A stretch of 64,000 bases of DNA from Schmidtea polychroa (GCA_044892525.1 CM097885.1:80538001-80602000); one strand, 5' to 3'. Shown: positions 2,691 to 39,470, counted from the first letter of the stretch. A program made the numbers and translations. The notes: generated from the letters alone by a model not told the origin.

Positions 2691-2758
2691 TCATCTCCTC
2701 GATGATGTAACGGGAATACATTGGTCCCGTCCTTTATTGGATATTCACGCACCCTTCC

Positions 2759-3064
2759 TTAAATCTCGGTCTCACAGTAGATTTTATGTAAAGCTTCAGA
2801 CTGAGCTTTTATTGTTAATCGTTGGCATTGGCTTTCTTCTAGGAGGCTGTTTCGACAGTGCTCCAACCGTAATACCTTAGTCTTCTCCTTTATCTGGGAA
2901 GAGGAGAACCATGTACATTCATAATGTTCGATTCGTTTTCTCAATTGTCCCACATGTTCCTTTAATTTTCGGATGTCTTCATTCTTATCCGCGCAGGATA
3001 AACACGGGGGAAGGCCCTTTGGTGGTAGGCTGGGTTCGCACATTCTAGAAATGAATCGTCGCAT
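2759..3064 (-). CDS. unknown CxxC/coiled-coil 'TWFS' family protein, copy A (101 aa, probably C-terminally truncated)
   Basis: About half the residues are identical by hand alignment to 38904-39470 (PCxSCADKN, TWFS, EHCR, QSEALHK). Followed on the minus strand by AATAAA and a GTTACA end at 2706. Confidence 0.6.
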   Translation of the reverse strand: MRRFISRMCEPSLPPKGLPPCLSCADKNEDIRKLKEHVGQLRKRIEHYECTWFSSSQIKEKTKVLRLEHCRNSLLEESQCQRLTIKAQSEALHKIYCETEI

Positions 3065-3869
3065 CGCCGTAGATAAAACTGATCGCTGACCGCTCGGTGA
3101 ATTTCAACCTTATGGCTTTCCCCTTCCTCATACCGCATTTTTTAATTAAAAAAATTCATAATCATCATTGTTATTTTACTTGGTTTTCGATAAGGGTGAA
3201 ATTTAATCAGCAGCAATATCCACATAAGTCCTCCCTTTCAATCTACATTATTTGTTAGTTATTTTATTGGAAAAATCAGCTTTAACTTTGTATTAATTTC
3301 CTTATTAAGAGAAATAATTAGACCTAAATGGGAACAATTAAAAATAGATTCTACATGTGTGACTTAAATTTAAATATTTCAGTCGCAGAGTTATTATTCA
3401 CAGACAATTTTTATTGTTTATGCCAAGTGTTTTATTTTTGTCGGTTTGTCGTGGGTTGTCGATCGATTCATCTCAGTGCTTTATCTCTCGGTGTCGTGTA
3501 ATTATTTACGCTTTTCCAGTGGATTCACCTAATTCCAATTTATCGTTAATATTTACGTTGACGCATGATTACTTATAAACAAATCTGATGGATTTAGTCG
3601 AATCGAACGATCGTTGGCCTAAATTTATTTATCTTATCTTCCACTTTTGTTTAGAGAAAATCTAAATCACGCCGTGCGATAGAATACTACTAGCCGTATG
3701 TTTACCGAGTGAAGTTTAATCGTATTCGTTTACGAATGAAGCGTTGGCGATGATTCGCGCATTCAGAGATTCTATTACCGATCATGAGATAACTGCTGTT
3801 CCTAATCGACATCGAATCTTGACTATTACGGTAATCGTATTGTTACTAAACGTTGGAGTATTTCGATCT

Positions 3870-4906
3870 TAAATTATGCAGATTTTCCGGGTCGAATGGA
3901 AGATACTTGTCTGATCAAAGAAGTGAAGATGGAGAATTTACCGTAAATCAGTGGATACGAACTCTAAAAGCTACCTCGATAATACTCTCTCGAACGGAAC
4001 TTTCCTCGTTCAATTTGGAATTTTTCTATTAGAAAAGTCTGGAATCATATGAGATTTGACGATTTTTAGAGTTGCGGATTTCTCGCGAAAAAGACATCTA
4101 TTACTGCTCGATGAAAACACTTGTCATTGCACTCAATGGATGTTATATAGATAAGGCTTCTCCAATTACCAGGACCACCTAGACACCACCGGTATCGCTA
4201 CCGACCGTCTCTAGACCGTCCCGATAGACAGAGTTCACCACATTTATGCTATCAATAATAATAAAATGTTATGAAAAATGAATATTGTTACAAAAATAAA
4301 TATTGTGATAAATCGTCTACTTTTAATGACTGAAAAATAAATATAATTAATTTACCTGGTGACGATGTCCTTTGGAATCCGAGTATGATGTCACAAATGA
4401 TGTTCTCCGCCGTTTCCTGTGGCTACCCTGAGCGTGTGATTCTTATCATCTCCTTCAACTGCATAAATCTGGCAATTTGGAGTCATGGCATAATCGAAAT
4501 TCATATCATAGTGGTAAAATCTAATATATGCAGAGTTCATCATACCCGGGGTTTCCAGACAGCTTCGTCGCCGGTTCCATAAAGGAGAAAGGCAGGTTGT
4601 TCATTTAAATAATATTTTGATTATAACATTAGCGTTAGGGATGAAGTAAATTCGGGGGGAAAAATTAAATGTCATAAGTGTGGAAAATTTCGTCATATTA
4701 TGCGTTCATGTCCACAAAATCAGTTAACAAATAACAATGGTATTAGTAACAATGATAATAATCGATCGAAGCAGACAACGTTTGCAGTGAATTCAGATCT
4801 TAAATTAACGTATTTGCAGAAACTTGAATTAGAAATTCAAGAAGAGAGAAACAGGCTAACAACAAATGAAACTGATTGGTACGTCAAGATGGAGCTGTTT
4901 ATATGA
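3870..4906 (+). pseudogene. decayed retroelement gag-like region with CCHC zinc knuckle
   Basis: CHKCGKFRHIMRSC (CX2CX4HX4C) at 4670-4711, followed by an Asn-rich tract. The upstream FSGSNG...TVNQWIRTLK segment is a weak capsid-like hint. Confidence 0.6.
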
Positions 4907-4949
4907 TGTCAGCCAAAAAGAGGCGAAAATAAAATAATTATGTAGAACT

Positions 4950-6372
4950 TGAAGTGTTGATGCTTCAAGAAAGTCCACAGGAGGACAAAGAGGAAAAGAC
5001 TATGGTCATAGAACCAGAAGTCTGTAAGGGTTTACAGGTTTCACCCAAGAAAATTCTAGTGGCTATGGTCATGGAGCCAGAAGCCAACTGAGAAATTTTT
5101 ACCGGTTTCACCAGTTAAAAATCGAAAGGCTATGGACATGGATCCAGTAGCTAATGTAATTGCTCCAACAGAGGTTTTGGAAAAAAGATCCCATCGATGA
5201 CTGTAGAAAGCTATTATTACGCAAGTGCGTATGACAAAAAGAAGTGAGACAGAAATTAGAAAATATTCGTTTAAACCCAGTTAATGAGAATGAGGTTGAC
5301 AAAGTAATAGATATCATATCAGATTTAGACAGAAATGAGGAATATCATCCAGAATTGAGAGAAATTCTGAGAAATATTGGCTTTAATTTGAAACAAAGTG
5401 AGAATCTGGCGGATTCTACAATTTTTGTATCTCTCCCAAATGATTGTTTTTGTAGATATACAATTAACCCAAGCGAAAAGTGGAAGCATTGGCAAAGAAA
5501 GTTTCTGAGTTAAAACCTTGATTGAGATGCAAATTTTACTTATTGGGAGAAAGATTATTAGAGGAAGAAACCCTGTCAGATTGTTGTATACTACCAGGGA
5601 AACATATGATTATAAAAGCAAAGTTTCACAATCAGCCGTATATCAGCCGTATCACATAGATTGGGAATCGAGCTGATGAAAAACCAAAGAGATGGGGAAG
5701 CCATTAAGATGATAATGGATTGGATACTGGAGTTAGAGATAATGCCATTGGTGGTGCCTTTATTAAAAGAGATCACAATTTCAGACACAAGCACAGATGC
5801 TGCTGATTAACAATGGACATGCTATCAGGCATTTGGAAGGTAGACAAGGTCCAGTGATGTTAGATATATGGATACCCAGGAGAGGACACCTGATACAACA
5901 ATTCTCATGTTATCATAAAGTAAAGAAACTGAGAAAAAGATTATCATAAATAGTAAAAGAATCATTCATAATAATGATACATGGTTGTCAGGTGGATGAC
6001 TACGAATTTCTAGTAGAAGTTGGATGTTTCCCCAATGAGGAAACAGTTGTATTAATATTACTGGTAGACTTTCCAGAGGATCAATGTGCAACCTTGAGAT
6101 TGCCAGATAATGATGAAATGGAAGATGAAATTGTGGATCCCGAGCAAAATTAAGTAGATGCGGATACTCATCAGGAACCCGTAACTACAGCAGATTTAGA
6201 TGAAGAGATAGATAAATATCTAAAGAAATTCGATAACACTGAAGACGAATTAGTCGAAATATTTTCAGCAGAGGAAGTTGGAAACGTACAATTAAATCGA
6301 GATGAAACAAACATCGGAGCTAGTACTTCGTAAAAAAGGAGAGAAGGGGAAGACCGAGAAAAAGTCAAATGA
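4950..6372 (+). pseudogene. decayed unknown ORF(s) between the gag-like knuckle and the glycoprotein gene
   Basis: Coding-like, purine-rich sequence with long frames broken by stops. Acidic C-terminus (DNDEMEDE...DLDEEIDKYLKKFDNTEDELVE) ends in a basic tract. Its TGA overlaps the next ATG (AAATGA at 6367-6372). No DSG/DTG, YxDD or integrase motif seen. Confidence 0.45.
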
Positions 6373-8452
6373 ACCCACCTCTAAGAGAACTTCTAAAACC
6401 AGTTACAATACAAAATGTAACTAAGCAGGCCCTAGCAGGGATAGCTAGCCAAATCGATAAAAACGTTGGAGACGCTAGTGATAAAACTGAAACATGGAAA
6501 AGATTGAATCAAATATTACGACTGATTAAGCCCGAATGGCAAATCAACAAAGATAAAAATATTAATGTTTAGAAAATTGCAGAAAAGTCAAGAAAGAGAT
6601 GGAAAAGATTCCAGGAAGTACCAAGAAACAAGAGATGTTCGAAGTAGCAGGACAGTTCATAGATGAAGGCATGATGAAAGGGGAAATGATAACGATTTTA
6701 GCCCTAATGTTTAGAAATGCCTTGATTATAAGTAAAGATTATTCATCGAGGATCCCAGCAGCAATAGACAGGTTAACTGATATCATCGAAGTGAATTTTT
6801 GAATATGGATGGCTGAACACAAGTTTTGGGAGATAAAAGAGACGAAAGGAAAATATGAGTTAAATGAAGAATTGTTAACAGATAATATTTCAAGTAATCC
6901 ACGGGGAACAAGTGGATTTACTAGTTGGATGATGATGCTTTTGGTAGAGATGGGAATATTGCGACAGATAAATTCCTTAACGGCATATGATTGTAGTGAA
7001 CCAATACTATCGTGAATCTACTCATTAGTAGACACATTGGAATGCAAGGAAGCTAAAGTTGCGAAAAAGGAAGATGTGGAATATCATGTTTATCAGCAAA
7101 CAGAGTTTTACAGAACCAGAGTCAGGGAATGTCGAATACAGAGAGTGACGTTTGAATATTACTGTGGATCAAATAGTTATTCAGCATTTTTAGGAGCTAA
7201 ACTCATTCCTATATCTTTAATAATCCCACCAGAGGGTTGTGTAAATGCTTTTCGGTCAAAAACAGTTAAAATAGATGATGAGGTAACAATTACCGCGGAG
7301 GAAGGGAAAAAGTAGGGTATAACTATTACCCGGGGAGGACCGATAGCAGATGATAGTTCTTGTCATGGCAGAAAGGAAGTAAGAGGTTCTAATGTGGTAA
7401 GCTATGTAGTAACAGTTAAGGATTACACAGTAGAGCTGATCGAATACGAGGGGACTTTTGAAGTATCTATGCGAAAAATGATGTCCCATCCGGAATGCAA
7501 CGTGAAATTTGGTTATTGTAAAACTAGTCTAGCAGTACTAACGTACCAATCAATGAGAGACTTTTGTGATTTAGGATACCTGAAAAAGGTATTATTTTCA
7601 AGGTTAGATAGAAAACGTTTTACGTCTCAAGATGCACAACAAAGTGGTTGGGGAGACAAGATGGTTCACAAAACGAAAAAGAAAGAATTGCCGGAGAAAA
7701 GCACAGCAGTAGTATTAGTCTCAAGGAACCCAACAGATGCAATTCGCTTAGTCTGAAAGAAATAGACAACAAAATGTGGTGTACCAATATTCGAAACCAA
7801 TTATAAGGGAATATATTTAGCATACAAATATGTTCCAGCAGCAAAATCACTACATCTATCAGATATTAAGATAGCCAAGTATATCAATAATAAGATTGAT
7901 TTTTTTGTATCATGATTTACAGAAACAATTGTTAGATGTGTATCAGGAAGTGATCCTGAACGACTGTCGTTTAAACCGAGAAATAATACGAAATAGATTA
8001 GCAATATCTATAGTTAATCCTGATTTAATAATGCCAATGTTGACAGGAACATTTGGTAGAATCTTGGGCGAAGCAATCTATAGCTACCAATGTAAATCAA
8101 TAAAGGTAGAAATTACCAAATACGATCGATATACATTAGAGCTTCCTGTGAAATATAAAAGAAAATTGAGATTCATGATACCAGTATCACATCAGTTATT
8201 AAAGGAAGATGCCTCACCGTTGACAACAATTTGCAATCCAGCAATGTTACCATTATACAAAATTAACAATATTTGGATTTCGTTGCCAGACAGAAAGCCA
8301 CCTTCAAAACCATTTGAAGTGCTTCAAGCTACAAAATTAGAAACTAAAATGGAGTTTCAACTATTAAATGAGATGTCAAAAGGGGAGTATATACTCCGGA
8401 AGATATTGAAGAAGCTCGGAGAGCAATTGTATTTCCCCAAATTAGAGATTGA
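6369..8452 (+). pseudogene. chuvirus-like (class III, gB-like) envelope glycoprotein G1 with long N-terminal leader, C-terminally truncated
   Basis: Hydrophobic WMMMLLVEMGIL precedes AYDC (6983-6994). Then VYQQTEF..VREC..YYCG..S, C-x-GYC, YINNKIDFLY, DCRLNREIIRNRL, GRILGEAIYSYQC, ELPV, CNPAMLPLY and GVYTPEDIEEARRAIVF. Four in-frame stops, frameshifts in a T run (~7900) and a G run (~8382). No TM anchor retained. Confidence 0.82.
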
Positions 8453-8523
8453 CAGAGATAATAACAAGAATCAAAATTATTACGTAATTGATAATTAAAA
8501 CAAAAATTTTAATTTATAAAAAG

Positions 8524-8610
8524 TAGGGGGGTATTTTAAAAATTTTAAAAAATTAGGGGGGGGGGGTCTTTTTAAAAAATATTTAAAAAAATAGGGGGGG
8601 GGGCGGGGGT
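8524..8610 (+). repeat. three A-tract/G-tract units (polypurine-tract-like) at the G1/G2 junction
   Basis: AAAAAGTAGGGGGG, AAAAAATTAG(11G) and AAAAAAATAG(10G)CGGGGG separated by ~20-25 nt AT spacers. Confidence 0.7.
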
Positions 8611-8639
8611 ATTTGGATCTGGAGTACACATAACTATCT

Positions 8640-10670
8640 ACTGTGGAACAAATAATTTATTTTGTTATTAAAATAATTTGTTAATTTTATATCCGTAATA
8701 TGTATTTTAACTTGAGCTTTCTCAACTCTTTTCTTGGACACAGATAAAAAGTCTCATACACTGTTTGTCCACACTTATCCACTAATCGCTTTCGTATAAA
8801 TTTCATACCATCGTCCAATAAAGTTGACATCAAGACTACTGGAGTTTTTATCTTTCTCAGTTGAGTTATTTTTACTGCTATATCCAATTTCGCTTCAACC
8901 TTTAGGGTTTCTGGTGTATTTCTCAACTGTTTGCCACCCATTTCGTTGAAACTCATTGTTTTTAAATGTACCAAATTACACAAATTGGTCTTTACTTCAT
9001 GTACCAAAAATTGATTCTCCAGTTTTACCAATGGTCTGTTTCATATTACAGAATGAATGAGTTTCTAATTTACCTGTGTCATCGTTAAAAGCTCCCTTAA
9101 ATTCTCTCAATTCTGTTGAATATTCCTCTATCAAAGCAACTTCATCAATAATTTGTTCATTCATTTTATATGATTTTCCTTGACAATCACCATTGGTTCT
9201 TATCGTCCATTTTTCGAAAATCGTTTCTCGTATTGCATGATTTAGTTTTACCTTCAATTTCACTTCGGGGCTTATTTTCAATTCTTCCTTTGAAACACAG
9301 CTATGCAATTTTCTGAATTTATGTCAACTGGCCTCGGGATTGCATACATCTTAATTAATGATGTGTGAATCCATTTGCCACAATAGAATATAAAACTTGT
9401 TATTTTTCACAATACACTCTCTCACCGTGACATGTATTGAGGTCTCACTATTTGAGATTCTCAACTTACTGGCTCTAATATAAATGATCGAATTAAGACT
9501 GATTACTAAAATTTATTCAAAAATAAAATTCACCCTTTAAAAATTACAACTCAATATGTTTTTTTCTGAAATTTTGATACTAAATTTATTTAAAACCTAT
9601 GCTGGTTATGTTTCTGTTGTATGTTTTGAAGTGCGTGTTATATTGTGAATGCAAAAAGATTCTGTTAGGCTTTTCTGAACTGTCCTATTTTGAAATCTCA
9701 TAAAGATTACCTTTCCAAGATTCAGGTGCTAGATTTAATTTTTGGGCGAATAAACTGATTTTGGTGATCGTTTATATACTAAATTTTTCTACATGTTTAA
9801 CACTTAATAAATATTTATTTTATTTTCTTTATACCTAATTGTCTAACGTTTATTTTATTAATTCTAGAATATTTATTTTATTTCTATAATTGCTAATTCC
9901 ACTGCTGTTTATTCTACCAATCAGATTGAAATTAATTTAGAAAATTATTTAATGCTTAAATTATTCTTATAATATTTTTTTAGATTATTATACTGGGAAA
10001 ATTATTTAATTCAAGAATGCTTAAATTATTCTGACATTATTTTTTATTTCTTTTAAATAATTTACTCGTTATTTTTATTTGTGTTCACATAATAAAAATT
10101 AAAAATATCTAACTACAATAAAATAAATTATACAGATGACATAAAAATTCAATAAAAATAAATCATGTTCCAATTAAAGTTCGATAAATTGTATATTCAA
10201 TTCCATAAAAATGAATAATGATAAAAATAAAGTTTCTAACACCAAAGATAAGGAAATAGATGAAAGTTGTTGTTCAATCATTGGCTCTTGTTTGGGGAAT
10301 TGGATTGTTGAGTTGTCGATCCGGATAGCAGAGAAGACTTCGACTATTTATTGAAGTTCCTCGGTGTAGACGTTAATTCTGTACTTGTCTGGCCCTGTTC
10401 TAGAATATTTTTCTAAGATGAATGTAGTGATGGATCTACCCTCATCATCTGACACATGTCTAAATCCTGACTCTTGGTATACTTAATACTTTACATCATT
10501 TTCCACTGTCAAACTCATTGGGTGTGTCTCCTGGCATTCTGTCATGTCTACCATGGAATAAATTTTTCCAATTTTTTTTGAGAACAATCATAGATGATCA
10601 GACACGCGTTTGAGTTGTGATTGCACATAATATTATAACAAAAAACATTATAAATGGAAGTTTCATGGGT
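8640..10670 (-). pseudogene. second divergent chuvirus-like glycoprotein G2, interrupted by an insertion at 9435-10454
   Basis: Signal-like MKLPFIMFFVIILCAIT, then IYDC..IYSMVDMTEC..DVKY*VYQESGFRH|VTVREC..FYCG..IPRPVDINSENC, NGDCQG, PVVLMST..DKCGQTVYET and IHITDIKLTNYFNNKINYLFH. These blocks are collinear with G1. Multiple frameshifts. Confidence 0.8.
9435..10454 (+). mobile_element. solo-LTR-like insertion (1020 bp) with 4-bp TSD CATG
   Basis: CATG at 9431-9434 and 10455-10458. Ends are TATTGAGGTCT...TCTGACA, and the start matches the TGTTGAGGTCT LTR terminus at 59687. Removing it restores the G2 frame CAT GTC ACG GTG AGA GAG TGT (HVTVREC). Confidence 0.75.
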
Positions 10671-12720: not shown

Positions 12721-12953
12721 CTAATTTTTCTTCTCAAAATTTTTTATTAATAACCTAACCTAAACTAAAATAAAATAAAGTTTTAAATATTTTTTATAAC
12801 CATATGTGAAAAGAAGTCCTGCAATGTTATAAATATGTATTAACTTTCAAAGTAAATTATTAAAATCCTGAATTTCCAATATCTGTTAGAAAATTGTTAA
12901 TATTTCAAAATACTGAAATAAATGTAAAAATACTATATAACCTATTTACTATC

Positions 12954-13971: not shown

Positions 13972-14342
13972 TGTTGGCGCTTACGAAAAAGACAATAAAA
14001 AATGAAAAGAGAATTGGAGTTGATAGCGAGCTTCCGTAAGTACCAACTAAGTACCCATGGTTGTGGTCCTTTTGGAACTTTACTAAGTTGTCGAAAGTAT
14101 AGAGTAGGTGAGCCTCTATGTTAAGACTACTCCGTAGACTTTCTTGGCAGGTTCGTGACTGCCGATAGGATATATTACGTCGATATCTATAATTCAGATA
14201 TCAAGGTCCTCTAACTTCCAAAAAGACCATTTCCTGGAGTGTAGTGAGTCGATGGCGCAACGAGAATATCTAATCTGCGTGATTAATAATTAATGTTGGG
14301 CTAGTACTGATTCCTAGACCCAAAAATCTTGTAAAGGTGACA
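13972..14342 (-). mobile_element. solo-LTR-like element carrying the conserved structured motif
   Basis: Minus strand reads TGTCACC...GCCAACA. Motif at 14044-14182. No matching TSD found. Confidence 0.5.
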
Positions 14343-17144: not shown

Positions 17145-17311
17145 NNNNNNNNNNNNNNNNNNNNNNNNNNNNNNNNNNNNNNNNNNNNNNNNNNNNNNNN
17201 NNNNNNNNNNNNNNNNNNNNNNNNNNNNNNNNNNNNNNNNNNNNNNNNNNNNNNNNNNNNNNNNNNNNNNNNNNNNNNNNNNNNNNNNNNNNNNNNNNNN
17301 NNNNNNNNNNN
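17145..17311. other. assembly gap
   Basis: N run. Other gaps lie at 27175-27415 and 61279-61418. Confidence 1.
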
Positions 17312-19210
17312 CCCATGTAACCTCATGCGTATGGTAATGCTACTTATATATACTATCAATTCTAATTCATCCTCTTAAATCTTAAAATGTCATAAATGAC
17401 CCCCTCCCCCTCCCTTATAGCCCCATGTATATCTGTAATTATAGTAGTACTACTTATATATACTACTTATGAAACCCAACTTATAATCTTAAATTTTACT
17501 TGTAGATTTGAACTTATGGTTGTGCCCTACCATTCTAAGGATACTTATAATTATGTTAATAGATACCGCCCATATAAATTCAAATTTGCCGTTTTAGATT
17601 ATATACACGACCCCGGATGATGCTCTATATTGGTCATAACGGACACCATAAATTCCAATTTATAATTTTGGCCTATGAATTTCCCCCTTATAAGGTTATA
17701 TATACCTATAATTATTATTAATGACTACCTAGATATGATTTATGAATTTACAAATTTTATGAATAAGCCCTTTGATTCCATAGCAACTCGTGCTTATATC
17801 TACAATTTACTTATAATAATCGAAATTCGGATTTCTAAATTACAGAAGAATAATTGTACACTTTATGAGCCTTGTAATCTTTATTCCCTAAGTTATAACC
17901 ATCCAGAATCTCAGTATCATATTATTAGTACCCTTCGTCATTGTAACATTTATATAAATACTATTCATATAGCGAAATTATTAAACCTATAAAGTCATAA
18001 CATAACTGAGCGGTTAACTTAATAAATTTATAATCTTTATAAATCACCACCCCCCCCCCCCCCAACAGTAGGACAGACAACAATAATAATAACCTGTCAT
18101 ATACATATATGTATTCAACTTATAAGTTATAATTAAAATTGGCTACCCAGGAAATGAAGTACTAAAAATAACATTACCAGATCAAGTATTTAATTAAAGT
18201 CATTTAAATACCCAATACTTTGAATGTTAAAGAAAAATCCAGAAATCCAATTAAATTTATTCAATAACAAAATTGAACAGGGTTAAAATACAAATGTGCA
18301 GTTAACTTAATAGTTGTAATTAAAATTGACCACCCAGAAAATAAAAGTACTAAAAATCATATTAACAGATCACAGTATTTAATTAAAGTCATTCAAATTA
18401 CCAATTGCGTTGAAATGTCAAAGAAAAATCCAAAAATCCAACTAAATTTATTCAATAGTGTAATTGCACAGGGTTAAACATCCGATGAAACATAGTACAT
18501 TGAGAACACAGTGTATGCTGCATCGAGATACGAGAATCCAATGGATGTACAGCATTTGAGGAATTCCCCCGCGTTGTAGCGATATGGGATAAATTCATAA
18601 ATTAGCGCACTACTCCAACGTCAATTGGACATATTTTCCGGGGTGGCTGAGGGTTGTGGCAGAGCCCTGATTCCTAAATAACTTATTAGATCGAGGTTAG
18701 AAGAATAAAAGACCCACTTTAAGTTACACCCTCTTCCTAATATCGGCATCCCCCATCTCCAGGATGTCAATCATCCCTGAGGACTTGGATCTCTGTAGCG
18801 AACCTGGAACCTAAATTATAATTGTAATTATTTCAGAAAATGATTATTACCCTTTTGTTGTTCCTTTTACAACTATGAAAGGATATCAGAATTAAGAGCC
18901 AAAGGTAAATTGCCCATGATGCCGGTTATTGATGAGTTTCCTAATCACATTCCTGCTTCTAATAAATCTAAATCATGCAAATTTATAGAAAATCATAAAT
19001 TACGAGGAAAAGTTGAAAAATTAACATTTATAAATTGTTATATAAACAAACCTGTAATAATCGTAAATAGGTGATTTAATCACCGTGAATTAAATGTTTA
19101 CCCAATTTTTTTGTAAAGAGTAAAAGAATCTGACTAATTAACTTCCACATTAATTTAACTCGCCCGACTTGAGATTGAGTGATGATAACTAAAATTGAAA
19201 TAAGCGGAAT

Positions 19211-19709
19211 TGTAACCGGGAACAGGTCCAACAACAGGTCGAGTGTCTTCAAGCCAGCATCACTAAGTTCAAAGAGCGATGCAAAGATGGAACGGACTTA
19301 GTTTCGCCCCAAGGTCATGCACAAGCGCATGAAACAGATTGAACAATTGCAGCTTCAAAGTGCTCAGGACAAAACCGAAATCCGCACTCTGAAGTTGCAA
19401 ATGCGTGAAATAGAGAAACCTAAATCAGAGAACTATAGACGAGCATGTCACGGCAGCAGTTCGCCCAATGGCTACGGAGCTGGCCGAAATCCGTACGGCC
19501 AAAACCACCAAGTCCAAGCGCAAACGGCTAGGGCGAGACGGAAGAGAACAGTTAAAATGATTATGATTACGCAACCCAAACCACTTCATAAACAAGAAAT
19601 GAACGATATGATTAACTTGCAAATAAAATTGTATTGCTTTAATGCTAGTTTGATGCCTGTTAGTTTATTGAGGTTGAGTGAAAAATTGCGAGTTTTGGGA
19701 AAACAATAG
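19211..19709 (+). pseudogene. 'TWFS' family copy B (5'-truncated, frameshifted)
   Basis: LQASITKFKERCK/MERT*FRPKVMHKRMKQIEQLQLQSAQDKTEIRTLKLQ, where TAG replaces the W codon. Nucleotide homolog of the 28930-29690 copy. Confidence 0.6.
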
Positions 19710-19711
19710 AG

Positions 19712-19947
19712 TCAAGGGACCAAAGCAAAATCGGCCGTATATCTTCTACCGATAGTCTGTGGACCCAAAGAGTACCTGACAATTATAGTGCAAGTGGTGC
19801 GCTCACTTTTTGCGAGTACTCACCCAGTTGATACATTACCAACGATAATCACTCATTGGATATCAATTGGTAGGATCATCATTGTATTCTTGTTTACGCT
19901 GGAAACAACACGAAAGGGTAAGATGTTTGACTACCTGTAACCCACCA
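19712..19947 (+). mobile_element. short LTR-like end downstream of copy B with partial structured motif
   Basis: Colinear with 28930-29160 (inverted) and ends TAACCCACCA. Motif at 19743-19821. Confidence 0.5.
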
Positions 19948-20339
19948 TTAGTATTAAAATTATACTGAGAACTCAAAGCAAAAATCTATTGTTTGACAAC
20001 AAATCAAGTAAAAATACATTCACTTAGTCAGAAATAGATTCATTGCATAATAGTTTCCTATATATAACCTATTTTTTTGTGTGCGAGTTGGTGTGCATTC
20101 ATTAATAAAACAAATTCAAATTATTTATTTTTACTAATTGTGAATTTATGAAATTAACAAATTTTCTAGATTCTTTTATTTTTCTATTAAATTCATTTAA
20201 ATTATATATTCTCATTATTTTTAAATTTTTATATATATTCTCAATTTCATATTATCGCCTTGAATTTGAATATGCTTCAATTGTTATTTATTTTTGTTTA
20301 TTTCCTGTAATACTTCTTGAATTTTTCATTAACTTCATT

Positions 20340-25396: not shown

Positions 25397-25399
25397 ACC

Positions 25400-27170: not shown

Positions 27171-27999
27171 TTATNNNNNNNNNNNNNNNNNNNNNNNNNN
27201 NNNNNNNNNNNNNNNNNNNNNNNNNNNNNNNNNNNNNNNNNNNNNNNNNNNNNNNNNNNNNNNNNNNNNNNNNNNNNNNNNNNNNNNNNNNNNNNNNNNN
27301 NNNNNNNNNNNNNNNNNNNNNNNNNNNNNNNNNNNNNNNNNNNNNNNNNNNNNNNNNNNNNNNNNNNNNNNNNNNNNNNNNNNNNNNNNNNNNNNNNNNN
27401 NNNNNNNNNNNNNNNACTGGTTCTTATACAGATAGGAACAAATATAAGTCTTTGTTTTTTAAAATAACAAAATTTACCAATGATAATCAAATTTGACAAA
27501 TTGGTTCTTTTGCACTCTTTGACTAATTATCGATATTTTAAACAAAATGCGTGGCAAATATGTAACAGTATGTCATATAGTTCGTGCTGTGTTATATAAT
27601 TGCGATTGATTAAAGTTTATGTGTAACGTTTCTGTTTGTTCCAGGTTTTTGTTTCTTCTCAAGATTTACTTTTGAAGATGCTTTTTGGAATAATTTTGGG
27701 GTGAGTTAACTGATTTTTGCGCGCTTATTTATATTTGGTGTTTTATGGAAATAATTTAATTAATTTTTTTCACATTATTATTTTATTATTTTTTTTATAT
27801 GTATTATTATTATCTAAATCTCATTCTTATACAGATGCTATAAATAATATGTCATTTATCCATTATTTTATATACCCGTTTTTCTTGTATATTCCCACCT
27901 TAGAATAATCAATTAAAATTAATATTGTTATTATTTTCATTAGTTTTATATATTTATTTATATGAATCCTTAAAATACAAATTCCTTTTCGTTTTCTCT

Positions 28000-28920: not shown

Positions 28921-28929
28921 GAATATATG

Positions 28930-29160
28930 TGTTGGGTTAAAGGTAATCAAATATTTTACCTCGTCGTGCTGTTTCCAGCGTAACCCAAAATACAATTGAA
29001 ATGTAACCACTTGATACCCGTTGAAGGATCAACGTTGATAATGTATCAAGGGTTGGAGTACTAGCAAAAAAGTGAGCATACTCTGTATACTATAATTGTC
29101 TAGTACTCCCTTGGGTCCACGGACTGCCGATAGAAGGCCTGTGTCCTATTTCCCTGACCC
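28930..29160 (-). mobile_element. short LTR-like end downstream of copy C with structured motif
   Basis: Preceded on the minus strand by purine tract AAAAAGAGAAGGG and ends TAACCCAACA. A perfect 10-bp stem GGAGTACTAG/CTAGTACTCC lies at 29055-29109. Confidence 0.55.
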
Positions 29161-29418: not shown

Positions 29419-29690
29419 TTAGTCTTGCCCAAGCTGCATTGCCGGTGTGGTTATGATTTCTGCCATCGGTTGTATCTGGGCGATCACGTCTTGGTTCATC
29501 GCTTGTTGGTGCACCTGCGTTTCTAAATTTCTTATTTGTAGACGGAGAGCTCGGATCTCAGTTTGATCTTGGACGCTCTGAAGCTGTAGTTGTTGGATCA
29601 GCTTCAGGCGCTTTTGCATTTCGGTGGGACTAAACCAGGTCCCTTCTAATTCCCGGCACCGTCCCTTGAACTCTGCTGGTCTCGTTCCAT
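29419..29690 (-). pseudogene. 'TWFS' family copy C
   Basis: An in-frame extension upstream of the annotated Met gives EFKGRCRELEGTWFSPTEMQKRLKLIQQLQLQSVQDQTEIRALRLQ. Confidence 0.62.
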
Positions 29691-29729
29691 CATTCCAGTT
29701 TCCATCACCAATATAAAAAATTAGCGAGT

Positions 29730-30949: not shown

Positions 30950-31260
30950 TTATAATTGCAATTTATCACCTGACTTTCCATCAATCGAAGAAACTGAACT
31001 TTATTATTCATCAAGCGAAGAAGATACTGGTTATAATGGGTTCAATTGGCAAAATATTATAGTGAAGCCAAGAATGTTGGATTATAATGAAGAATCTGGG
31101 TCAAGAAACATCGACAATGATTAATGCGAGATGTATTGTCTGCTAATCATATAACATAAGAAAAGGCACTAGATGTATGTATCAGTAGTGTGATGCTGCT
31201 CTCTATCAATTAGTGTTTCGAAAATTATACAAAGATGAATTATTGGACATAAAATTTAAT
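30950..31260 (+). pseudogene. internally deleted piggyBac transposase (acidic N-terminus fused to Cys-rich C-terminus)
   Basis: DFPSIEETELYYSSSEED followed by RCIVC..IRKGTRC....CDAAL....FR. Confidence 0.55.
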
Positions 31261-31374
31261 AAATTTTTGAAAAAAACGCGGTTGTCAGAGTTAAAACTTA
31301 CTAAAGATCAAAAATCAATATTGGATGGGGGTTTTTTGGTATGGTTGATCACCAATTTCTTCTAAAATTAACGT

Positions 31375-33179: not shown

Positions 33180-34126
33180 TTTCGGCTGATCTGATTATTG
33201 CAATCTTCGGCGCGTGCTGTGTGTTGTGTTTATCTTTAAATGTCTGTGCGCGCTGTTCTGTTTTAGAAATTAATTATTTCGATTTACTGAGATACAATTA
33301 TAATATCGAAATGATTACTTTTGTCTTGTCGAGTCAATTGTGCTTTATTTTCCTTGTGTTTTTTTAATTATTTTTGATTTTGGATAATAAGTTGGAATCG
33401 AACTTTTTTTTGTGATTCATTAAAATTTTGTAACTCAAATTGTAGTATAAATTTCGGAATATATTTTTCTGTGGTTCTTGAATTTATTTTTGGAATTTAA
33501 AATGAAGATTTTGGATTTTATTAAAGATGAATCAATTTTGATACCAACACAGCAAAAACTAATGAATACAGAGAAGATTAAATGGGATATGAAAAGTTCT
33601 TTTAGTGATTGTATCATTGACTCGTTAAACGAAAATAATATCCATCGAAATTTACCGAGAAAGTGTGAGAAGCGGTTAGCGACAGGGTTTACTTGGCTAG
33701 AATTCTATTGGAAAGGTTCAATCTAGTGAACACAAATCTAATAATTTAATGAATTTCAACAGAACTAAGATATGTATTTCATATAATATCCTAAAATGTC
33801 TTGGAATTCCAGTTGAAGTTATAATCAACAGGATCAACCAGTCTTAGTGGGCAATTTCAACTATTCTATTCTGTAAGGATAGATGATGAAGATAAAATAA
33901 AAAAACCTAGTAGTGATATATAATTAATTTTATTGAGGATCCTATTTGATAGGATAGCAGCGCAATTCAAAAACGAGGGGGGACAACCGAGCCCAGTGAT
34001 GATGACAAATACCCTATCCATTGCTACTAGTTCTTATCATTCTATTCGTATCGTAATAAGTGTTTTTATTAAAATTGGGTATGAGGGTTATTTCACGGAG
34101 CATAGTGGGAGAGAAAGAAAAGTAAA

Positions 34127-34380
34127 TTAATGATTATTATAGGAATGTAGATATTGAATATACGTTTGGATTTTTGATACGTCGCTTTTGGAATTTCTGA
34201 AGCCAAACATAAGATACTGAGAATATACATCTTGGGGTATTCCAAGTGTCTTAGCTATCTGTGTTGCTTTAGTCTTCAGAATTGACGGTGTAATGATCAA
34301 GCCCGTCTTTCGGCTTGCAGATAACCATTCCTCGAGAACATTTTCCATTTCGGGAAATTTAGGATATGAGGCTTGATATG
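34127..34380 (-). pseudogene. pogo/Tigger CENP-B-type HTH fragment
   Basis: KFPEMENVLEEWLSASRKTGLIITPSILKTKATQIAKTLG. Confidence 0.75.
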
Positions 34381-35378
34381 TACTGGTATTTGCCGAGTTG
34401 GTGAAATTTTCAATACGTCTTTTTCATTATTTTTGATATTTCAAATTGACTTTTCACTAACATTGTAATCTCGGACTATTTTCCTCATCTTTGGAGGAGT
34501 TGAAGATGACAACAAACAAATTATTTCTAATATTTGTGTATCAGAAGGTCTCTTACCAGATCCATTCGTCATTTTGACTTTCAAAAATAATTAAATACCC
34601 TATTAAAATCAAATAATCAATTAATGGATCAATGAATGATCAAAAAGCCACTTTTTTCTAGACAATTGCCGAAGTCCGCAATTCAGTTAATTCCGCATTT
34701 TTTACTTAGATCCAGTATGCGGAATTAACCGAACGCCTACTGTAATACGAATAATGATATTAATTCTTATAGTCATGGCGGTAATAGTGGAAGTAATCAT
34801 AAAATTTAGATTAATAGTGATATCAATGATCATAATGGACCTCAAATTAATATTCAAAATGACGAAACTAATAATAAAGATTGAAAAAAGCAAAACTGAA
34901 TGATAATATTTTTCCTCATAAAATTACAGTTATTTAACAATATACATTAAACCTTTATGAAATCAAAATAAGCCCTTACTGAATCGTGTGAATTACAAAT
35001 TATTCGCTGATTTAGATTATAGGACTGGTTCAAATTTCCAAATATGAGTTTGAACTATTTAGATTTTTTAATAAAAAAGTGGTATGTCCAGATGTCGGCC
35101 TTTTATATATGTTTTGGTTTGTTCACTCGACCAATCAGTTGTGATCACGCCTTATGCGCTTTGATTATTTAATTTTATTATTTTGGTTTAAATTCCAATT
35201 GATTTGATTGGTCTATTTTATTTTTTGTTTTAATTATTCGTATTTTTACTTTGCTTTTCTTATATTTTCTCTTTTCCTGGTGCTATCGCCTTTTGTTTCA
35301 GTTTCACCTCTTGGGTCATCTAATTCTCTTTGTTAGTTTGTGTCTTTTTTCGGCGAGTTTCATGACTTTCTGTGTTAA

Positions 35379-37755
35379 TACGTTCGTTACATTTGTTTTT
35401 TAACATTTTTGCCATTTGGACATCGTGTACCACAGGTGGTACACTAGCGATTTGTTTTCTGATCGTGTGCGCCACCTGTGGTACACTATGTGTATGTTTA
35501 TAGTACTTTATGAAAATGCTAACATATTATATTAAAACTATGTTTTTAAACTTACGACTGTCATGAATATTCAAAAATTGATTATATTATGCATGTACCA
35601 GTGGTGGTACACAAAAATTTTATAGTAAACTCTATTTAAATAGTACTTAAAATTTCAAAAAACATTTTGTTGAAAGAAATTAAAAAATTCATATTTTATT
35701 CAGAAATAAAAAGAAATTCACTATAATGAAATATAACATTACGTATAACATATAATAAAATTAATATAAATAGTATTTAACGATATTTTGCATTGAAACA
35801 TTCCAAACACATTTTAGGTTTATCAATGCAATTATTGCAAAAAGTTTGTACTTTTTTGGCGTCACTGCGAACTACTTTAGCCCCTTTTAATTTCTGTATA
35901 TTTCTAGTGGTTGCTGCCTGACCATCGCGTTTAATTGATTAGTTGGATTTTTTAGGTTGACTGAAGGAGTGCTGGTACTAGGTTGGGTATTATCATTATT
36001 ATTATCATTATCCCTTAGTAGACCTTCTATTACTTTTTCTTTGAAATTAAGCATGGTAATGGTTTCATTTGGTGTTAGATAGTGGTTAGATATAACCCAT
36101 GCATTAACAATGCTTGTCCAAAGTATGAGCTCAAAATAAATATTTTATACCATCTAATGGATTTTCGTAATGGTGTATCATAAGACGACATTTGGTCAGA
36201 ATAATGACACCTTTTTTTATTTGGTTACACTGCAACGGGTTTAGTAACATTTTCTCCAAATTTAGTTTTTCCTGTTTCAGCTAGCTTGACGGTATACTCT
36301 GGATTACTGGACAGCATGACAACTTCTCTTTTGTCTGTCCATTTGAAGATGCGTATTCCATTTTTGTTTTTTTCCAAATATTTCACCCTTTTTTACTTTT
36401 TTCTTACATACTTCTTTGCAGTTGCTTCGTCTGTTTTTTCGCAAAGTTCTACAAACATAGGTCTTTTGTTGCAGCAATTCTTCAGGAAGCGGTACACTTG
36501 TATAAAAATTATCAACAAATAATGTTCTGTCTATCTATAAGTCCATCAAGTAAACCCATTGTTATGTCTTACGAATGGCCAAAACTGGATTTGGTACTTC
36601 CTGCGCTACTATATACCTTAATAGCGTATGTTTATCCATGGGAAGTGCATAGTTTATACAATTTTAAATACTTATGTGCTTTGCCTGGTAGATAATGCCT
36701 AAAATTTAGAAGGCCTCTCCATGGTGTCATTGTTTCATCTATAACAACATCCTCGCCACGGGTAACAGCTGATTTGGATGATTGTGATAGTTTTGCTAGT
36801 AATGGGTTTATTTTCACTAATTTTGTTTCTCCAACCAGGTTTTCATTATCACTAAAATGTGAACATTTTAAGAGCACTTCAAATCTATTACGTGACATAT
36901 TTTTGACAATAACAGGATTTCTGTATTAAGGATTTTTTGACCAATATAATCGCATTGTAGGAACAGTAGATGTACCCATAATCAAAATAATTGCCAAATA
37001 TTTTTGATTTCCGTTTCATTCGTATTCTACCAATTTGCTATTATTGAACGATGCCTAATAATATGTGTGGCAATGAATTGTAATGCATACCTATTTGTTT
37101 CTGTGACAATAAGATCTAAAATTTTATCAGTGATGAACAATTGTATAAACTAAACGGATCAGTATAATCAAGAATATAATTTAGACCGCTGTCATCATGA
37201 AAAAAGAATTGTTTGTCTCTAATTGTACATTCTCCCCATGTGTCAGTGCGTGATGTTACGTCTAAATCCTTCATTGAGCCAGTTTCGCTGATTATATCAT
37301 CTATTTCATTATTTGATTCGCTATCATTGTCAGATTCTGATGGTTCATATGACTCTTCAGATCCAGAAAAGTCAACATCTTCCATATCAGAAGAATCTCC
37401 TTTCGGGACAGCTAAAATCTCTTGCGGTTTCATTCTATATGCATAAATGTTAAATAAAATTTTATTTAAAATTTTTTAAATATGTGTGCCATATATGGTA
37501 CATGACGATTAAAATGCCGTATGTGTATTATATGGACGTAGTGTACCACAGATGGTCCATGACGTAAAAGTAACAAGAACTACTTATTGGACCCTGTTGT
37601 TTTTATTAAGCTTACCTTTGCCTACTCACAGACGAAATACTTTATAAATTTAAAAATAAAAATTTACACCCACAAATAATTTCCGTAATATTCACTCACG
37701 GCGTTTCAAAATACTGTGGAGTGTACCACTGGTGGTACACGATGTCACAAACGTG
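35379..37755 (-). mobile_element. decayed piggyBac (PGBD4-like) element
   Basis: TTAA-flanked ends (CACGTT-type) with GTGTACCAC..GGTACAC subterminal palindromes. Acidic N-terminus, MSRNRFEVLLKCSHF, VVIDETM.PWRG..FRHYLPGKAHKY.KLYKLC, DNFYTS and C-terminal CNNC..MCLECF. Confidence 0.88.
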
Positions 37756-38185
37756 TTAAATGTGTTTCATGTGCAACTTCTTATGCATTTTAGTTTATTA
37801 ATTTTGTGTTTACTTTTTATTTATTTGTGTTTTGGTGTTTTTTCCGTGCTTTTAAATGGCTGTAATGCGATTTCTATGTTGTATGGCTTCGTCTCTACTT
37901 ACTACTTATTATCTCTTTAAATTTACTTTACTACTTTTAGTTATTTTATTCGGGTTTTTGCTACTGGATTCTTTTCCATATTCGCACGATAATGGATGGA
38001 TGAATTTACAATCTCCATTAGAGAATGACACGGAAAAAGTTCAGGAGATTGTTTGTCAGATTGGATTAGGGAATCCATTTTTTAACGAAAACCGAATTCC
38101 GGAATTTTCGGATTTACGTAAGATGAAATTCGGAATTCCGGAATTATTCTGGAATTGAAAAATAAAAAATCAAGAGCAAAAAAAA

Positions 38186-38519
38186 TGTTAACCAGTGCTG
38201 GGGTACCACTCGGTTGACTAAGCTAATTCAAGGCTCTACCATAAGGGATGATTGTCCGACTACATCTACTAACTCTCAACTCGTCAACTCAGAGTAGGAC
38301 CTCACACGATCTGCATTCCAACATAGTGCCCGTGAATTGCTTCACGTTGGTACTGCACTATGCAGGCGAGACGCCAGTAAGCAGGTGAGCTTCTGCCTTT
38401 AAACTACTCCTTACTGAGGCCTCGACTTCCCACACCTGACTGCCGATAGAAGGACTTACGTCTAGCAACGCGATCCGATCTCTCGCTGGGTCTCACATCA
38501 AAGGCAAACTTGACTGATA
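38186..38519 (-). mobile_element. LTR-like end downstream of copy D with complete structured motif
   Basis: Minus strand reads GGGGGG tract (38520-38525), then TATCAG...GGTTAACA. Motif at 38322-38462. Confidence 0.55.
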
Positions 38520-38721
38520 CCCCCCAAAATGAGTACTTCTATACATTTAAATATCGATACTAATTCATCACAAAAGACATATAAGAATACCAAAGAGAAA
38601 TAAAAATTTATTGTCCTAATAACCACACAGAATACGACATAGTATTTACATAGGAAAAGAAGAGACAATGCAGGATGACGGGAGTTCATAACATTTTTCG
38701 AGAACGTTTCACCGTGGGGCC

Positions 38722-39470
38722 TCATTCCTTCCATTCCGTGGCGAGTAGCAACTCCTCTAAATCAAAGAACTCGGAGGCGTTCTCCTCCCAGGCTACACCG
38801 GCGGCTGATATAATTCGCGCGGGGGCCCCGATGGTCAAGTCTATCACCGCGGAACTGGTACTTCGGGTGGTCGGATCTTCCGCAGAGGCCTTATTCTGTC
38901 TGCTCAAGGTACGTTCGCGCTGTCTCCTTTTGCGCTCTGCACGAGATAATTGTTTGCGTTTAGGTTTGCCCGAAATTGCAGCTTGCTGAGGCGTGTGGAT
39001 GTGGATGTACTAGGAGTTGATGCCTTGCTAGTACCCGTGATGATAACATCTGGTCGCTTGGGCGACAGTTCTGTTTCGACGCAATCTCGACAGGATCTCT
39101 TGAGCGGCTGAGATGGATTTGAGGAGGTGTTATGATGATGCGGAAAGATATTATCGGCCTCTTTAATGGGGATCTGGACGATCTTTCGCGTGGTGGCTGC
39201 CTGTAGGTAGACCTTATGCAGCGCCTCGGACTGCTCTTTAATCAAGCTCCTTTGTGAACGACTCTCCGAGATGAGAGCGTCACGACAGTGTTCGCTGCGA
39301 TACAGCTTTTTCTGGGTCTCCTTCATCTGAGCGGGGCTGAACCAGGTGCCCTCCAACTCATCTATTTTCTTTTTGTAGCGCCCGATCTGGGCCTGCAGAT
39401 CCCTTATAATCGCATTTTTGTCCGCGCAGGAGAAGCATGGGCGTAAAACGGATTTGGCGGTTGGCAGCAT
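38722..39470 (-). pseudogene. 'TWFS' family copy D, restorable to ~248 aa by removing a 2-nt AC slip near 38995
   Basis: The 188-aa ORF continues in the adjacent frame as PQQAAISGKPKRKQLSRAERKRRQRER...AVIDLT...WEENASEFFDLEELLLATEWKE*. Confidence 0.62.

What the first reader, a model, noticed from the sequence alone, without database searches (positions are those of the whole stretch)
2759..39470. Unrecognised four-copy small-protein family (CxxC, coiled coil, EGTWFSP) tied to LTR-like 3' ends
Seen: four dispersed ORFs share a core. A (2759-3064, -) EHYECTWFSSSQ; B (19211-19709, +) MERT*FRP; C (29419-29690, -) ELEGTWFSPTEM; D (38722-39470, -) ELEGTWFSPAQM. A and D also share PCxSCADKN, EHCR and QSEALHK. 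B and C share a different downstream coil. In B, C and D the ORF is followed on the same strand by a purine tract and a 230-335 bp segment ending ...AACA/ACCA that holds a conserved structured motif. Known: gag, pol and env do not contain this motif as far as I recognise; extra 3' regulatory ORFs exist in complex retroviruses (foamy Tas, HTLV Tax). Inference: an LTR-retroelement lineage carries an accessory ORF just upstream of its PPT and 3' LTR, already split into two subfamilies.
Basis: partly seen in the sequence, partly recalled or inferred. Interest (0 to 1): 0.8.

Follow-up and report, generated by a model that had tools for sequence, protein, structure and literature searches.

The report
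Mobile small-protein gene with structured RNA tail
The four small reading frames are real, mostly broken copies of an unannotated mobile-element protein that travels with a conserved, folded 3' RNA tail. Nothing supports the idea that it is an accessory gene of an LTR retrovirus-like element; it looks more like a reverse-transcriptase-less retroposon.

Summary
A and D are clear homologues (50-54% identity, E 1e-26 to 1e-31). B and C form a second subfamily, linked to the first only moderately (E 1e-4; profile comparison 70% probability).

Codon position 3 is saturated while positions 1-2 are conserved, so the protein evolved under purifying selection.

An exhaustive search of 1.84 billion proteins found about 12 relatives. 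None is named. Most are fused in gene models to unrelated host domains, as expected for an unmasked mobile ORF. Pfam, PDB, Foldseek and Rfam gave no match.

The 3' tail is a real family with five copies, not three; two have no ORF upstream. It folds into two long hairpins with strong covariation (24 of 38 pairs compensatory, against 3-8 in controls).

The LTR reading fails:
- no second tail lies within 8 kb upstream of any ORF;
- no gag, pol or env lies upstream on the same strand;
- there is no conserved TG start, and no target-site or inverted repeats;
- the purine tract is absent in D and E.

Best reading (about 0.5): a non-autonomous, single-ORF retroposon whose folded tail is the signal for a reverse transcriptase supplied in trans. 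Its element class is unproven because the host genome could not be searched.

The parts
2702..3064 (-). Copy A: coding remnant of the A/D subfamily. It is broken by one premature stop and cut short at its 3' side, with no basic region. No tail follows it.
   Evidence: ORF. tblastn with D covers 3013-2702 at 50% identity, E 5.6e-31. The family HMM scores 111 bits, though A was part of the profile. The covariance model finds no tail downstream. A BED-finger/hAT remnant lies next to it at 2237-2581.
19211..19709 (+). Copy B: coding remnant of the B/C subfamily, broken by at least one in-frame stop.
   Evidence: 67% identity to C over 33 aa. 58% identity to the outside relative P0002 over 43 aa, E 4e-10. 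HMM score 15.8 bits, E 0.0012; B was not in the profile.
19723..19948 (+). Tail of copy B: structured 3' module ending ...ACCA.
   Evidence: Covariance model 145.9 bits. 76% identical to the C tail. Purine-rich tract just upstream, 68%.
29419..29727 (-). Copy C: coding remnant of the B/C subfamily. The frame is open, but it has no start codon ahead of the conserved turn and ends early relative to its outside relative, so it has at least one break.
   Evidence: 57.5% identity to P0002 over 73 aa, E 1.6e-18. 32% identity to D, E 1.4e-4.
28929..29156 (-). Tail of copy C: structured 3' module ending ...AACA.
   Evidence: Covariance model 157.2 bits. Upstream tract is 78% purine.
38725..39470 (-). 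Copy D: the best-kept gene of the A/D subfamily. It has a 188-aa intact frame. The GC-rich coding-like stretch continues beyond that frame, so D probably carries one frameshift relative to the longer relatives. That is suggestive, not shown.
   Evidence: 31-41% identity to 10 outside relatives, E 1e-7 to 4e-12. GC of 50-58% runs through this whole stretch. The match of the continuation to the relatives' basic region is weak, E 0.16-0.58.
38185..38472 (-). Tail of copy D: structured 3' module ending ...AACA. The whole D element is a GC-rich island of roughly 38185-39650 in 21-30% GC surroundings.
   Evidence: Covariance model 155.7 bits. GC profile, sequence. Upstream tract is only 53% purine.
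14014..14191 (-). Copy E: tail only, with no family ORF upstream. Its 3' end is uncertain, near 13985.
   Evidence: Covariance model 134 bits. No HMM hit upstream. Sequence.
48540..48800 (+). Copy F: tail only, ending ...AACA after a short internal duplication. It is preceded by three loose copies of a 49-nt unit (48275-48489) and has no family ORF upstream.
   Evidence: Covariance model 158.3 bits. Pattern hit, repeats. No HMM hit upstream. Upstream tract is 72% purine.

Best explanation
The window holds six dispersed, mostly decayed copies of one family of non-autonomous mobile elements of retroposon type, about 1.0-1.5 kb when complete.

Each complete unit is a short leader, one gene and a 3' tail.
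- **The gene** encodes a protein of about 150-300 aa. It forms an alpha-helical hairpin whose turn holds the invariant Trp, followed by an arginine-rich segment.
- **The tail** is about 220-290 nt, folds into two long hairpins and ends in ...AACA or ...ACCA.

Inferred mechanism:
1. The unit is transcribed as one sense RNA.
2. The protein, by analogy with ORF1/Gag-type proteins, oligomerises through its helical hairpin and binds RNA through the arginine-rich part.
3. The folded tail is the cis signal recognised by a reverse transcriptase supplied in trans by an unidentified autonomous partner of LINE type.
4. Incomplete copying from the 3' end leaves tail-only copies (E, F).

Shown here: homology of the copies, selection on the protein, the conserved RNA fold, the constant ORF-to-tail order and strand, dispersal next to unrelated genes in other genomes, and the absence of LTR and TIR features.

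Inferred only: the RNA intermediate, the trans-acting reverse transcriptase and the protein's role.
For: **Real protein under selection.** Nucleotide identity at codon positions 1/2/3 is 67/74/33% (A-D), 68/85/35% (C-L001) and 71/87/42% (B-C).

**Family outside the window.** The exhaustive profile search gave 15 hits at E<=1e-3. Eleven of them are true relatives: P0002-P0006, P0008, P0009 and P0011-P0014. P0017 makes twelve. The relatives' gene models carry unrelated host domains (SNF, GDC-P, Peptidase_S8, Ribosomal_L21p, CRAL_TRIO, ABC_tran, Actin) on either side of the shared domain. That pattern fits a dispersed mobile ORF. None carries RT, integrase or gag.

**Tail.**
- Five copies score 134-158 bits; the next best hit scores 13.9 bits.
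- 85% of cells are paired, against 30-42% when partners are slid.
- 24 pairs show compensatory changes, against 3-8 when slid, and 0 of 500 shuffles reach the observed values.
- The B-C tail is 76% identical while synonymous sites are saturated, so the tail itself is constrained.

**Layout.**
- Order and strand are constant in the three ORF-plus-tail copies. Two copies are tail only.
- No paired repeats, TIRs or upstream tails were found.
- D is a 42-58% GC island of about 1.45 kb in AT-rich DNA.

**Protein fold.** AlphaFold2 gives helix 16-40, a turn, then helix 46-98, with block-mean pLDDT of about 85-98 over residues 11-100.

**Precedents.** ORF1-only LINE derivatives (HAL1) and tails whose structure LINE proteins recognise are established (PMC5753468, PMC5786205).
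Against: - No partner element with a reverse transcriptase and the same tail was found. The one LINE-type RT remnant in the window (54390-55718) has no such tail.
- No poly(A) or microsatellite follows the 3' end, and no target-site duplication was found.
- Only two tail-only copies exist. Their 5' limits could not be placed, so 5' truncation is an inference.
- The strand preference of the fold is weak: 85% against 81% paired, and 18 G-U cells against 10 A-C cells.
- The protein has no detectable likeness to any known ORF1p or Gag.
- The host genome could not be searched, so copy number and full-length structure are unknown.
Confidence: 0.5

Rival explanations
1. One reading: an LTR retroelement lineage carries this ORF as an accessory gene just upstream of its polypurine tract and 3' LTR. 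The tails are LTRs.
For: The tails end in CA. A purine-rich tract precedes the tail in B, C and F. The ORF always lies directly upstream on the same strand. Tail-only copies could be solo LTRs.
Against: - No second tail lies within 8 kb upstream of any ORF, and only five single tails occur in 64 kb.
- No gag, pol or env lies upstream on the same strand.
- There is no conserved TG start and no 4-6 bp target duplication.
- D and E lack the purine tract. F keeps it although it has no ORF, unlike a solo LTR.
- No relative is fused to retroviral domains.
- The tail shows covariation typical of a folded RNA signal along most of its length.
Confidence: 0.1
2. The ORF is the last gene of a longer autonomous retroelement (a non-LTR, Penelope-like or DIRS-like element with an extra 3' gene). 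All copies in this window are truncated at the 5' side.
For: Tail-only copies show that truncated forms exist. The 5' limits of B, C and D are not defined, and B-C similarity fades upstream of the gene.
Against: - D's GC-rich island stops about 200 nt upstream of its start codon.
- In three relatives the family domain lies at the very N-terminus of the gene model, and none is joined to an RT or endonuclease domain.
- No hammerhead or other Rfam family was found in or near the tails.
Confidence: 0.2
3. The copies are integrated pieces of an RNA virus or satellite (endogenous viral elements). The protein would be a matrix-, phospho- or capsid-like protein, and the tail a viral 3' untranslated region.
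For: - The protein has a coiled-coil hairpin and an arginine-rich segment. One relative gives a weak hit to the Pfam REV arginine-rich family (E 0.0013).
- Two relatives have a Pro-Pro-Pro-Tyr motif of the kind used as a late-budding motif.
- The 3' end is structured.
- A viral glycoprotein-like remnant lies in the same window at 7016-8495.
Against: - No relative was found in IMG/VR, by protein or by tail.
- There is no structural match in BFVD.
- Five diverged copies of two subfamilies within 64 kb, plus tail-only copies, point to repeated intragenomic spread rather than rare integrations.
- The glycoprotein remnant is on the other strand relative to A and has no tail.
Confidence: 0.08
4. A dispersed host gene family, or a domesticated gene, with a conserved regulatory 3' untranslated region. 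It would not be a mobile element.
For: Purifying selection acted on the protein. D has an intact 188-aa frame. The structured 3' region could regulate mRNA stability or localisation.
Against: - Three of the four copies are broken.
- Tails occur without genes.
- Relatives lie next to at least seven unrelated genes in other genomes.
- The copies sit in a transposon-rich, gene-poor stretch.
Confidence: 0.05
5. Cargo of a non-autonomous DNA transposon or Helitron that captured a gene fragment.
For: The window is full of DNA-transposon remnants. A hairpin near a 3' end is a Helitron feature.
Against: - No terminal inverted repeats surround B, C or D.
- The ends do not read as Helitron ends.
- The conserved fold spans about 100 nt in two long helices rather than one short terminal hairpin.
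Confidence: 0.05

Closest known systems
HAL1 (half-L1) elements of mammals
   Same: A non-autonomous retroposon that keeps a single ORF1-type gene and depends on a partner's reverse transcriptase (PMC5753468). The size class is similar, and there are no terminal repeats.
   Different: HAL1 is demonstrably derived from L1 and encodes L1 ORF1p. Here no partner is known and the protein matches no ORF1p family. HAL1 uses a poly(A) end, not a folded, sequence-specific tail.
HeT-A of Drosophila telomeres (own knowledge, not tested)
   Same: An insect non-LTR element with only a Gag-like gene and a long 3' untranslated region. The reverse transcriptase is thought to come from another element.
   Different: HeT-A Gag has CCHC knuckles, and the element is telomere-specific and polyadenylated. 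The present protein has no CCHC, and the copies are interspersed among transposon debris.
SINE/LINE pairs with 'stringent' 3' tail recognition, such as the eel UnaSINE1/UnaL2 type
   Same: A conserved 3' tail whose secondary structure is recognised by the partner LINE's protein (PMC5786205). Tail-only short copies and no need for poly(A) also fit.
   Different: Those tails are short stem-loops followed by short repeats. Here the module is about 220-290 nt with two long helices and a fixed ...AACA/ACCA end. No LINE with this tail has been seen.
L1 ORF1p and other coiled-coil ORF1 proteins
   Same: A long alpha-helical coiled-coil region followed by a basic, probably RNA-binding region.
   Different: There is no sequence, profile or fold match. 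The predicted unit is an antiparallel helical hairpin, not a parallel trimeric coil followed by RRM and C-terminal domains.
Accessory 3' genes of complex retroviruses
   Same: Only the position: a small gene close to the 3' end of an element.
   Different: There are no LTR pair, no gag/pol/env, no primer-binding site and no likeness of the protein to any viral protein. No named hit of that kind came back from any search.

Membership tests
LTR retrotransposon / endogenous retrovirus | Two same-strand long terminal repeats flanking the internal region | tested here: not met
   No tail-like sequence lies within 8 kb upstream of any ORF. The covariance model finds five single tails only. Self-comparison finds no such repeat. 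The search upstream of B crosses an assembly gap.
LTR retrotransposon / endogenous retrovirus | gag and pol (with or without env) upstream of the 3' LTR on the same strand | tested here: not met
   ORF lists and Pfam scans of the upstream regions show only hAT, piggyBac-type and Tc5 remnants or AT-rich DNA.
LTR retrotransposon / endogenous retrovirus | LTR termini TG...CA and a polypurine tract abutting the 3' LTR | tested here: inconclusive
   The CA end is present in B, C, D and F. There is no conserved TG start. The upstream 60 nt are purine-rich in B, C and F but not in D or E.
LTR retrotransposon / endogenous retrovirus | 4-6 bp target-site duplication | tested here: not met
   No flanking duplication was found. 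The 5' ends are not defined, so this is a weak test.
Non-autonomous non-LTR retroposon (ORF1-only or SINE-like) | No terminal repeats; copies share the 3' end and vary at the 5' end | tested here: met
   No LTR or TIR was found. Three copies have ORF plus tail and two have tail only. With only five copies, the 5' limits are imprecise.
Non-autonomous non-LTR retroposon (ORF1-only or SINE-like) | 3' tail shared with an autonomous partner LINE | not testable with these tools
   The host genome is not available. The RT remnant in the window lacks the tail. Metagenome and viral collections hold no copy.
Non-autonomous non-LTR retroposon (ORF1-only or SINE-like) | Conserved RNA secondary structure in the 3' tail | tested here: met
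   38 pairs, 85% of cells paired, 24 pairs with compensatory changes against 3-8 in slid controls, and 0 of 500 shuffles reaching the observed values.
Non-autonomous non-LTR retroposon (ORF1-only or SINE-like) | Poly(A) or short tandem repeat at the 3' end, and variable-length target duplications | tested here: not met
   The flanks after the ...AACA/ACCA ends are unrelated, with no A-run or microsatellite and no duplication.
Known ORF1p / Gag protein families (Pfam) | Significant profile match to an ORF1 or Gag family, including CCHC knuckle families | tested here: not met
   The four window proteins and all 15 alignment members give no such hit. A PDB profile search gave nothing below E 0.03. 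Foldseek gave nothing below E 0.3 against PDB or below 0.016 against BFVD.
Rfam RNA families (hammerhead, tRNA-like, known LINE/SINE or viral 3' elements) | Match at or near the gathering score | tested here: not met
   The whole window at gathering thresholds gave 0 matches. The D tail at E<=10 gave only two chance-level hits. No tRNA was found.
DNA transposon / Helitron | Terminal inverted repeats or Helitron termini | tested here: not met
   The inverted-repeat search around B, C and D shows no terminal pair.

The most novel reading that the evidence does not exclude
A previously undescribed class of protein-coding, reverse-transcriptase-less retroposon in arthropod-like genomes. Its own helical-hairpin, arginine-rich protein (with a Pro-Pro-x-Tyr motif in two relatives) would package its RNA. 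Its large two-hairpin 3' module would be a new kind of recognition signal that hijacks a partner's reverse transcriptase. On this reading the protein is a new, Gag-like RNA-packaging fold family with no link to known ORF1p or Gag.
Probability: 0.15. Interest if true: 0.65.

Novelty: new variant of a known kind. Interest (0 to 1): 0.4.

Why it matters
If the reading is right, this adds a new protein family and a new structured RNA signal to the known ways in which non-autonomous retroposons parasitise autonomous ones.

It also explains a set of wrong gene models in public databases, where host genes are fused to this ORF.

In practice the family is currently invisible to Pfam, Rfam and repeat-naive annotation. 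A profile and a covariance model for it would improve masking and gene prediction in the affected invertebrate genomes.

Tried and rejected
**Searches that gave nothing**
- The word-based protein search with D found nothing. With P0005 it found only three other relatives, and with P0002 only itself.
- Exact-product look-ups of D, a window hAT ORF, P0005, P0009, P0006 and P0011 were not on record. The host species and more genomic copies therefore could not be obtained.
- P0002 and P0016 sit on contigs of about 600 nt from ENA metagenome assemblies, with no room for a tail.
- The 15-nt tail block in IMG/VR gave 29 hits. None had the second block, so they are chance matches.
- The three-block tail pattern and the protein alignment in JGI metagenome contigs gave nothing. 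The protein alignment in IMG/VR gave nothing either.
- Rfam and tRNA searches gave nothing. PDB sequence and Foldseek searches returned only generic helical hairpins. A literature search for motif strings gave nothing.

**Hits and leads rejected**
- Four of the 15 exhaustive-search hits (P0001, P0007, P0010, P0015) are long repeat or coiled-coil proteins without the Thr-Trp turn. I rejected them as spurious.
- The Cys-x-x-Cys of A and D is not conserved in the relatives. A zinc-finger reading is rejected for the family as a whole.
- A 14-20 nt direct repeat flanking B's gene has no counterpart in C or D. I treated it as chance.
- A match of D's continuation to the relatives' basic region is weak (E 0.16-0.58). 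The frameshift in D is only probable.

Consensus lines printed by the alignment tools were not used.

Full report
**What is there**

The window is AT-rich (about 30% GC) and looks like invertebrate DNA packed with transposon debris. It holds hAT, MULE, piggyBac-type and Tc5/pogo remnants, a LINE-type RT remnant and a viral-glycoprotein-like remnant.

All four ORFs of the finding exist.
- A and D are unmistakable homologues: 50-54% identity over 82-105 aa, E 5e-26 to 6e-31 within the window.
- B and C are homologues of each other: 67% identity over 33 aa, plus 76% nucleotide identity over 209 nt of the downstream tail.
- The bridge between the pairs is weaker. D against C gives 32% identity and E 1.4e-4. 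A profile built only from outside relatives of the A/D type aligns colinearly with the outside relative of the B/C type at 70% probability, E 4e-5.

State of the copies:
- D has an intact 188-aa frame and probably one frameshift relative to longer relatives.
- A has one premature stop and has lost its 3' part.
- B has at least one in-frame stop.
- C lacks a start codon ahead of the conserved turn and ends early.

**Assembly gaps**

The N runs at 17145-17311 and 27175-27415 lie between copies. No ORF or tail is within 1.5 kb of them, and nothing in this analysis reads across them. Continuity could not be tested and the letters were not looked up. The only consequence is that the search upstream of B crosses the first gap.

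**The tail is a family of its own**

A 15-nt block found in C and D occurs five times with up to 3 mismatches, against 0.55 expected. A three-block pattern hits four copies against none expected.

Aligning the five copies shows several conserved blocks. A covariance model built on them, run without filters over both strands of the window, recovers exactly those five (134-158 bits). Nothing else scores above 13.9 bits.

A family HMM run against all six-frame pieces finds only A, B, C and D. Copies E and F are therefore tails without the gene, and A is a gene without a tail.

The tails end ...ACCA (B) or ...AACA (C, D, F). The 60 nt before the tail are purine-rich in B, C and F but not in D or E.

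**The tail is a folded RNA**

RNAalifold predicts two long hairpins. Counting on the alignment:

| Measure | Observed | Partners slid by 1-3 columns |
|---|---|---|
| Cells paired | 85% | 30-42% |
| Pairs with compensatory changes (of 38) | 24 | 3-8 |

None of 500 column shuffles reaches the observed values.

The strand preference is only slight: 85% against 81% paired, and 18 G-U cells against 10 A-C cells. The tail is better conserved between B and C (76%) than synonymous sites of the adjoining gene (42% identity at position 3). The tail itself is therefore under constraint. Rfam has no match and no tRNA was found.

**The protein is real and selected**

Nucleotide identity at codon positions 1/2/3 is 67/74/33% for A-D, 68/85/35% for C against an outside relative, and 71/87/42% for B-C. 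Position 3 is at the random level while position 2 is strongly kept. The copies therefore diverged under purifying selection, as lineages of an active element or gene do, and not by decay in place.

**Relatives elsewhere**

A profile of D, A and C was scored against 1.84 billion representative proteins and gave 15 hits at E<=1e-3. Four are spurious repeat or coil proteins.

The remaining eleven, plus one more from a later search, share the domain.
- The Trp of the turn is present in all 15 rows of the alignment. Five further columns (Thr42, Glu69, Arg71, Arg74 and Pro110 in D numbering) are kept in at least 90% of rows.
- D matches ten of the relatives at 31-41% identity. C matches the eleventh (P0002) at 57.5%.
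- None has a name.
- Seven carry unrelated host domains on one side or the other: a neurotransmitter symporter, glycine-cleavage P protein, subtilase, ribosomal L21, CRAL-TRIO, an ABC transporter and actin. This is the signature of an unmasked mobile ORF merged into neighbouring gene models.
- None is joined to a reverse transcriptase, integrase, protease or Gag domain.
- Most relatives have an arginine-rich stretch after the helical domain. Two have a Pro-Pro-Pro-Tyr motif.

**Fold**

AlphaFold2 with the 15-row alignment gives helix 16-40, a turn holding the invariant Trp, then helix 46-98. Block-mean pLDDT is about 85-98 over residues 11-100 and low elsewhere. Foldseek finds only generic helical hairpins in the PDB (best E 0.38) and in BFVD (best E 0.016). 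A profile search of PDB sequences gives nothing meaningful. The Cys-x-x-Cys of A and D is not kept in the relatives, so it does not define the family.

**Testing the LTR idea**
- Sensitive comparison of every tail with the 8 kb upstream (same strand) of every ORF finds nothing.
- The upstream regions hold AT-rich DNA or DNA-transposon remnants, not gag, pol or env.
- There are no terminal inverted repeats, no flanking duplications and no conserved TG start.
- D is a compact 42-58% GC island of about 1.45 kb whose 5' edge lies about 200 nt upstream of the start codon.
- F keeps the purine-rich stretch and some upstream spacer, partly triplicated, although it has no gene. A solo LTR would not look like this.

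**Interpretation**

It is well supported (about 0.85) that this is a mobile-element gene travelling with a cis-acting folded RNA tail. The class is less certain.
- **Best fit (about 0.5):** a non-autonomous retroposon, with one ORF1/Gag-like gene plus a tail that a partner's reverse transcriptase recognises. Tail-only copies would be products of incomplete copying. ORF1-only derivatives (HAL1) and structure-recognised 3' tails are established precedents (PMC5753468, PMC5786205).
- **Against it:** no partner, no poly(A) or microsatellite, no target duplications, and too few copies to see a 5' truncation series.

**Novelty and interest**

The protein and the RNA module are absent from Pfam, PDB, Rfam and the searched literature, and the family is almost absent from protein databases. 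New transposon families in invertebrate genomes are common, however. I could not check Dfam or Repbase. I rate it a new variant of a known kind, interest 0.4.

The host genome could not be reached: exact-product look-ups failed, and metagenome and viral collections held no copy. Everything about element structure therefore rests on six copies.

I declare these as slips.

Noticed in passing
window 4613-4903 (+) and 7016-8495 (+): There is a CCHC-knuckle-like ORF piece here. There are also three ORF pieces, two of which match Pfam Monjiviricetes_fusion, a viral fusion glycoprotein (E 7e-8 and 7.7e-22). The 4-8 kb stretch has strand-biased composition. It looks like a broken endogenous glycoprotein-bearing element or viral insertion. 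It is unrelated to the finding's family and lies on the opposite strand to copy A.
   Followed up: partly
window 284-1489 (+), 2237-2581 (+), 42401-44311 (-): hAT transposase remnants (dimerisation domain, BED-like fingers). The one at 2237-2581 abuts the truncated 3' side of copy A and may have caused the truncation.
   Followed up: partly
window 50814-52010 (-); 36307-36925 (-); 34130-34423 (-): Remnants of a MULE transposase, a piggyBac-type DDE_Tnp_1_7 and a Tc5/pogo HTH. The window is a transposon graveyard.
   Followed up: partly
window 54390-55718 (+): A non-LTR reverse-transcriptase remnant, with weak RVT_1 and zf-RVT hits. It carries no tail of the family, so it is not the missing partner, at least in this copy.
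   Followed up: partly
window 56961-57266 (+): A BTB/POZ domain exon (E 1.3e-16). It may be the only host gene in the window.
   Followed up: no
window 48275-48489 (+): Three loose copies of a 49-nt unit (spacing 73 and 93 nt) lie directly upstream of tail F. The last copy resembles the spacer between gene and tail in B.
   Followed up: partly
window 38185-39650: Copy D is a sharp 42-58% GC island in 21-30% GC surroundings, and the outside relative's contig is also GC-richer. This suggests a young insertion, or a composition foreign to this genome.
   Followed up: no
window 18101-18478; 45128-45942; 61586-61879: Tandem or near-tandem repeats: about 190 nt x2 at 83%; about 186 nt copies 630 nt apart at 82%; and units of about 106 nt at 90-94%. 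They are unrelated to the finding.
   Followed up: no
proteins P0003-P0006, P0008, P0013, P0014 (public gene models): Public gene models fuse this mobile ORF to unrelated host genes: a transporter, glycine-cleavage P protein, subtilase, ribosomal L21, CRAL-TRIO, an ABC transporter and actin. These are probably annotation errors worth flagging.
   Followed up: partly
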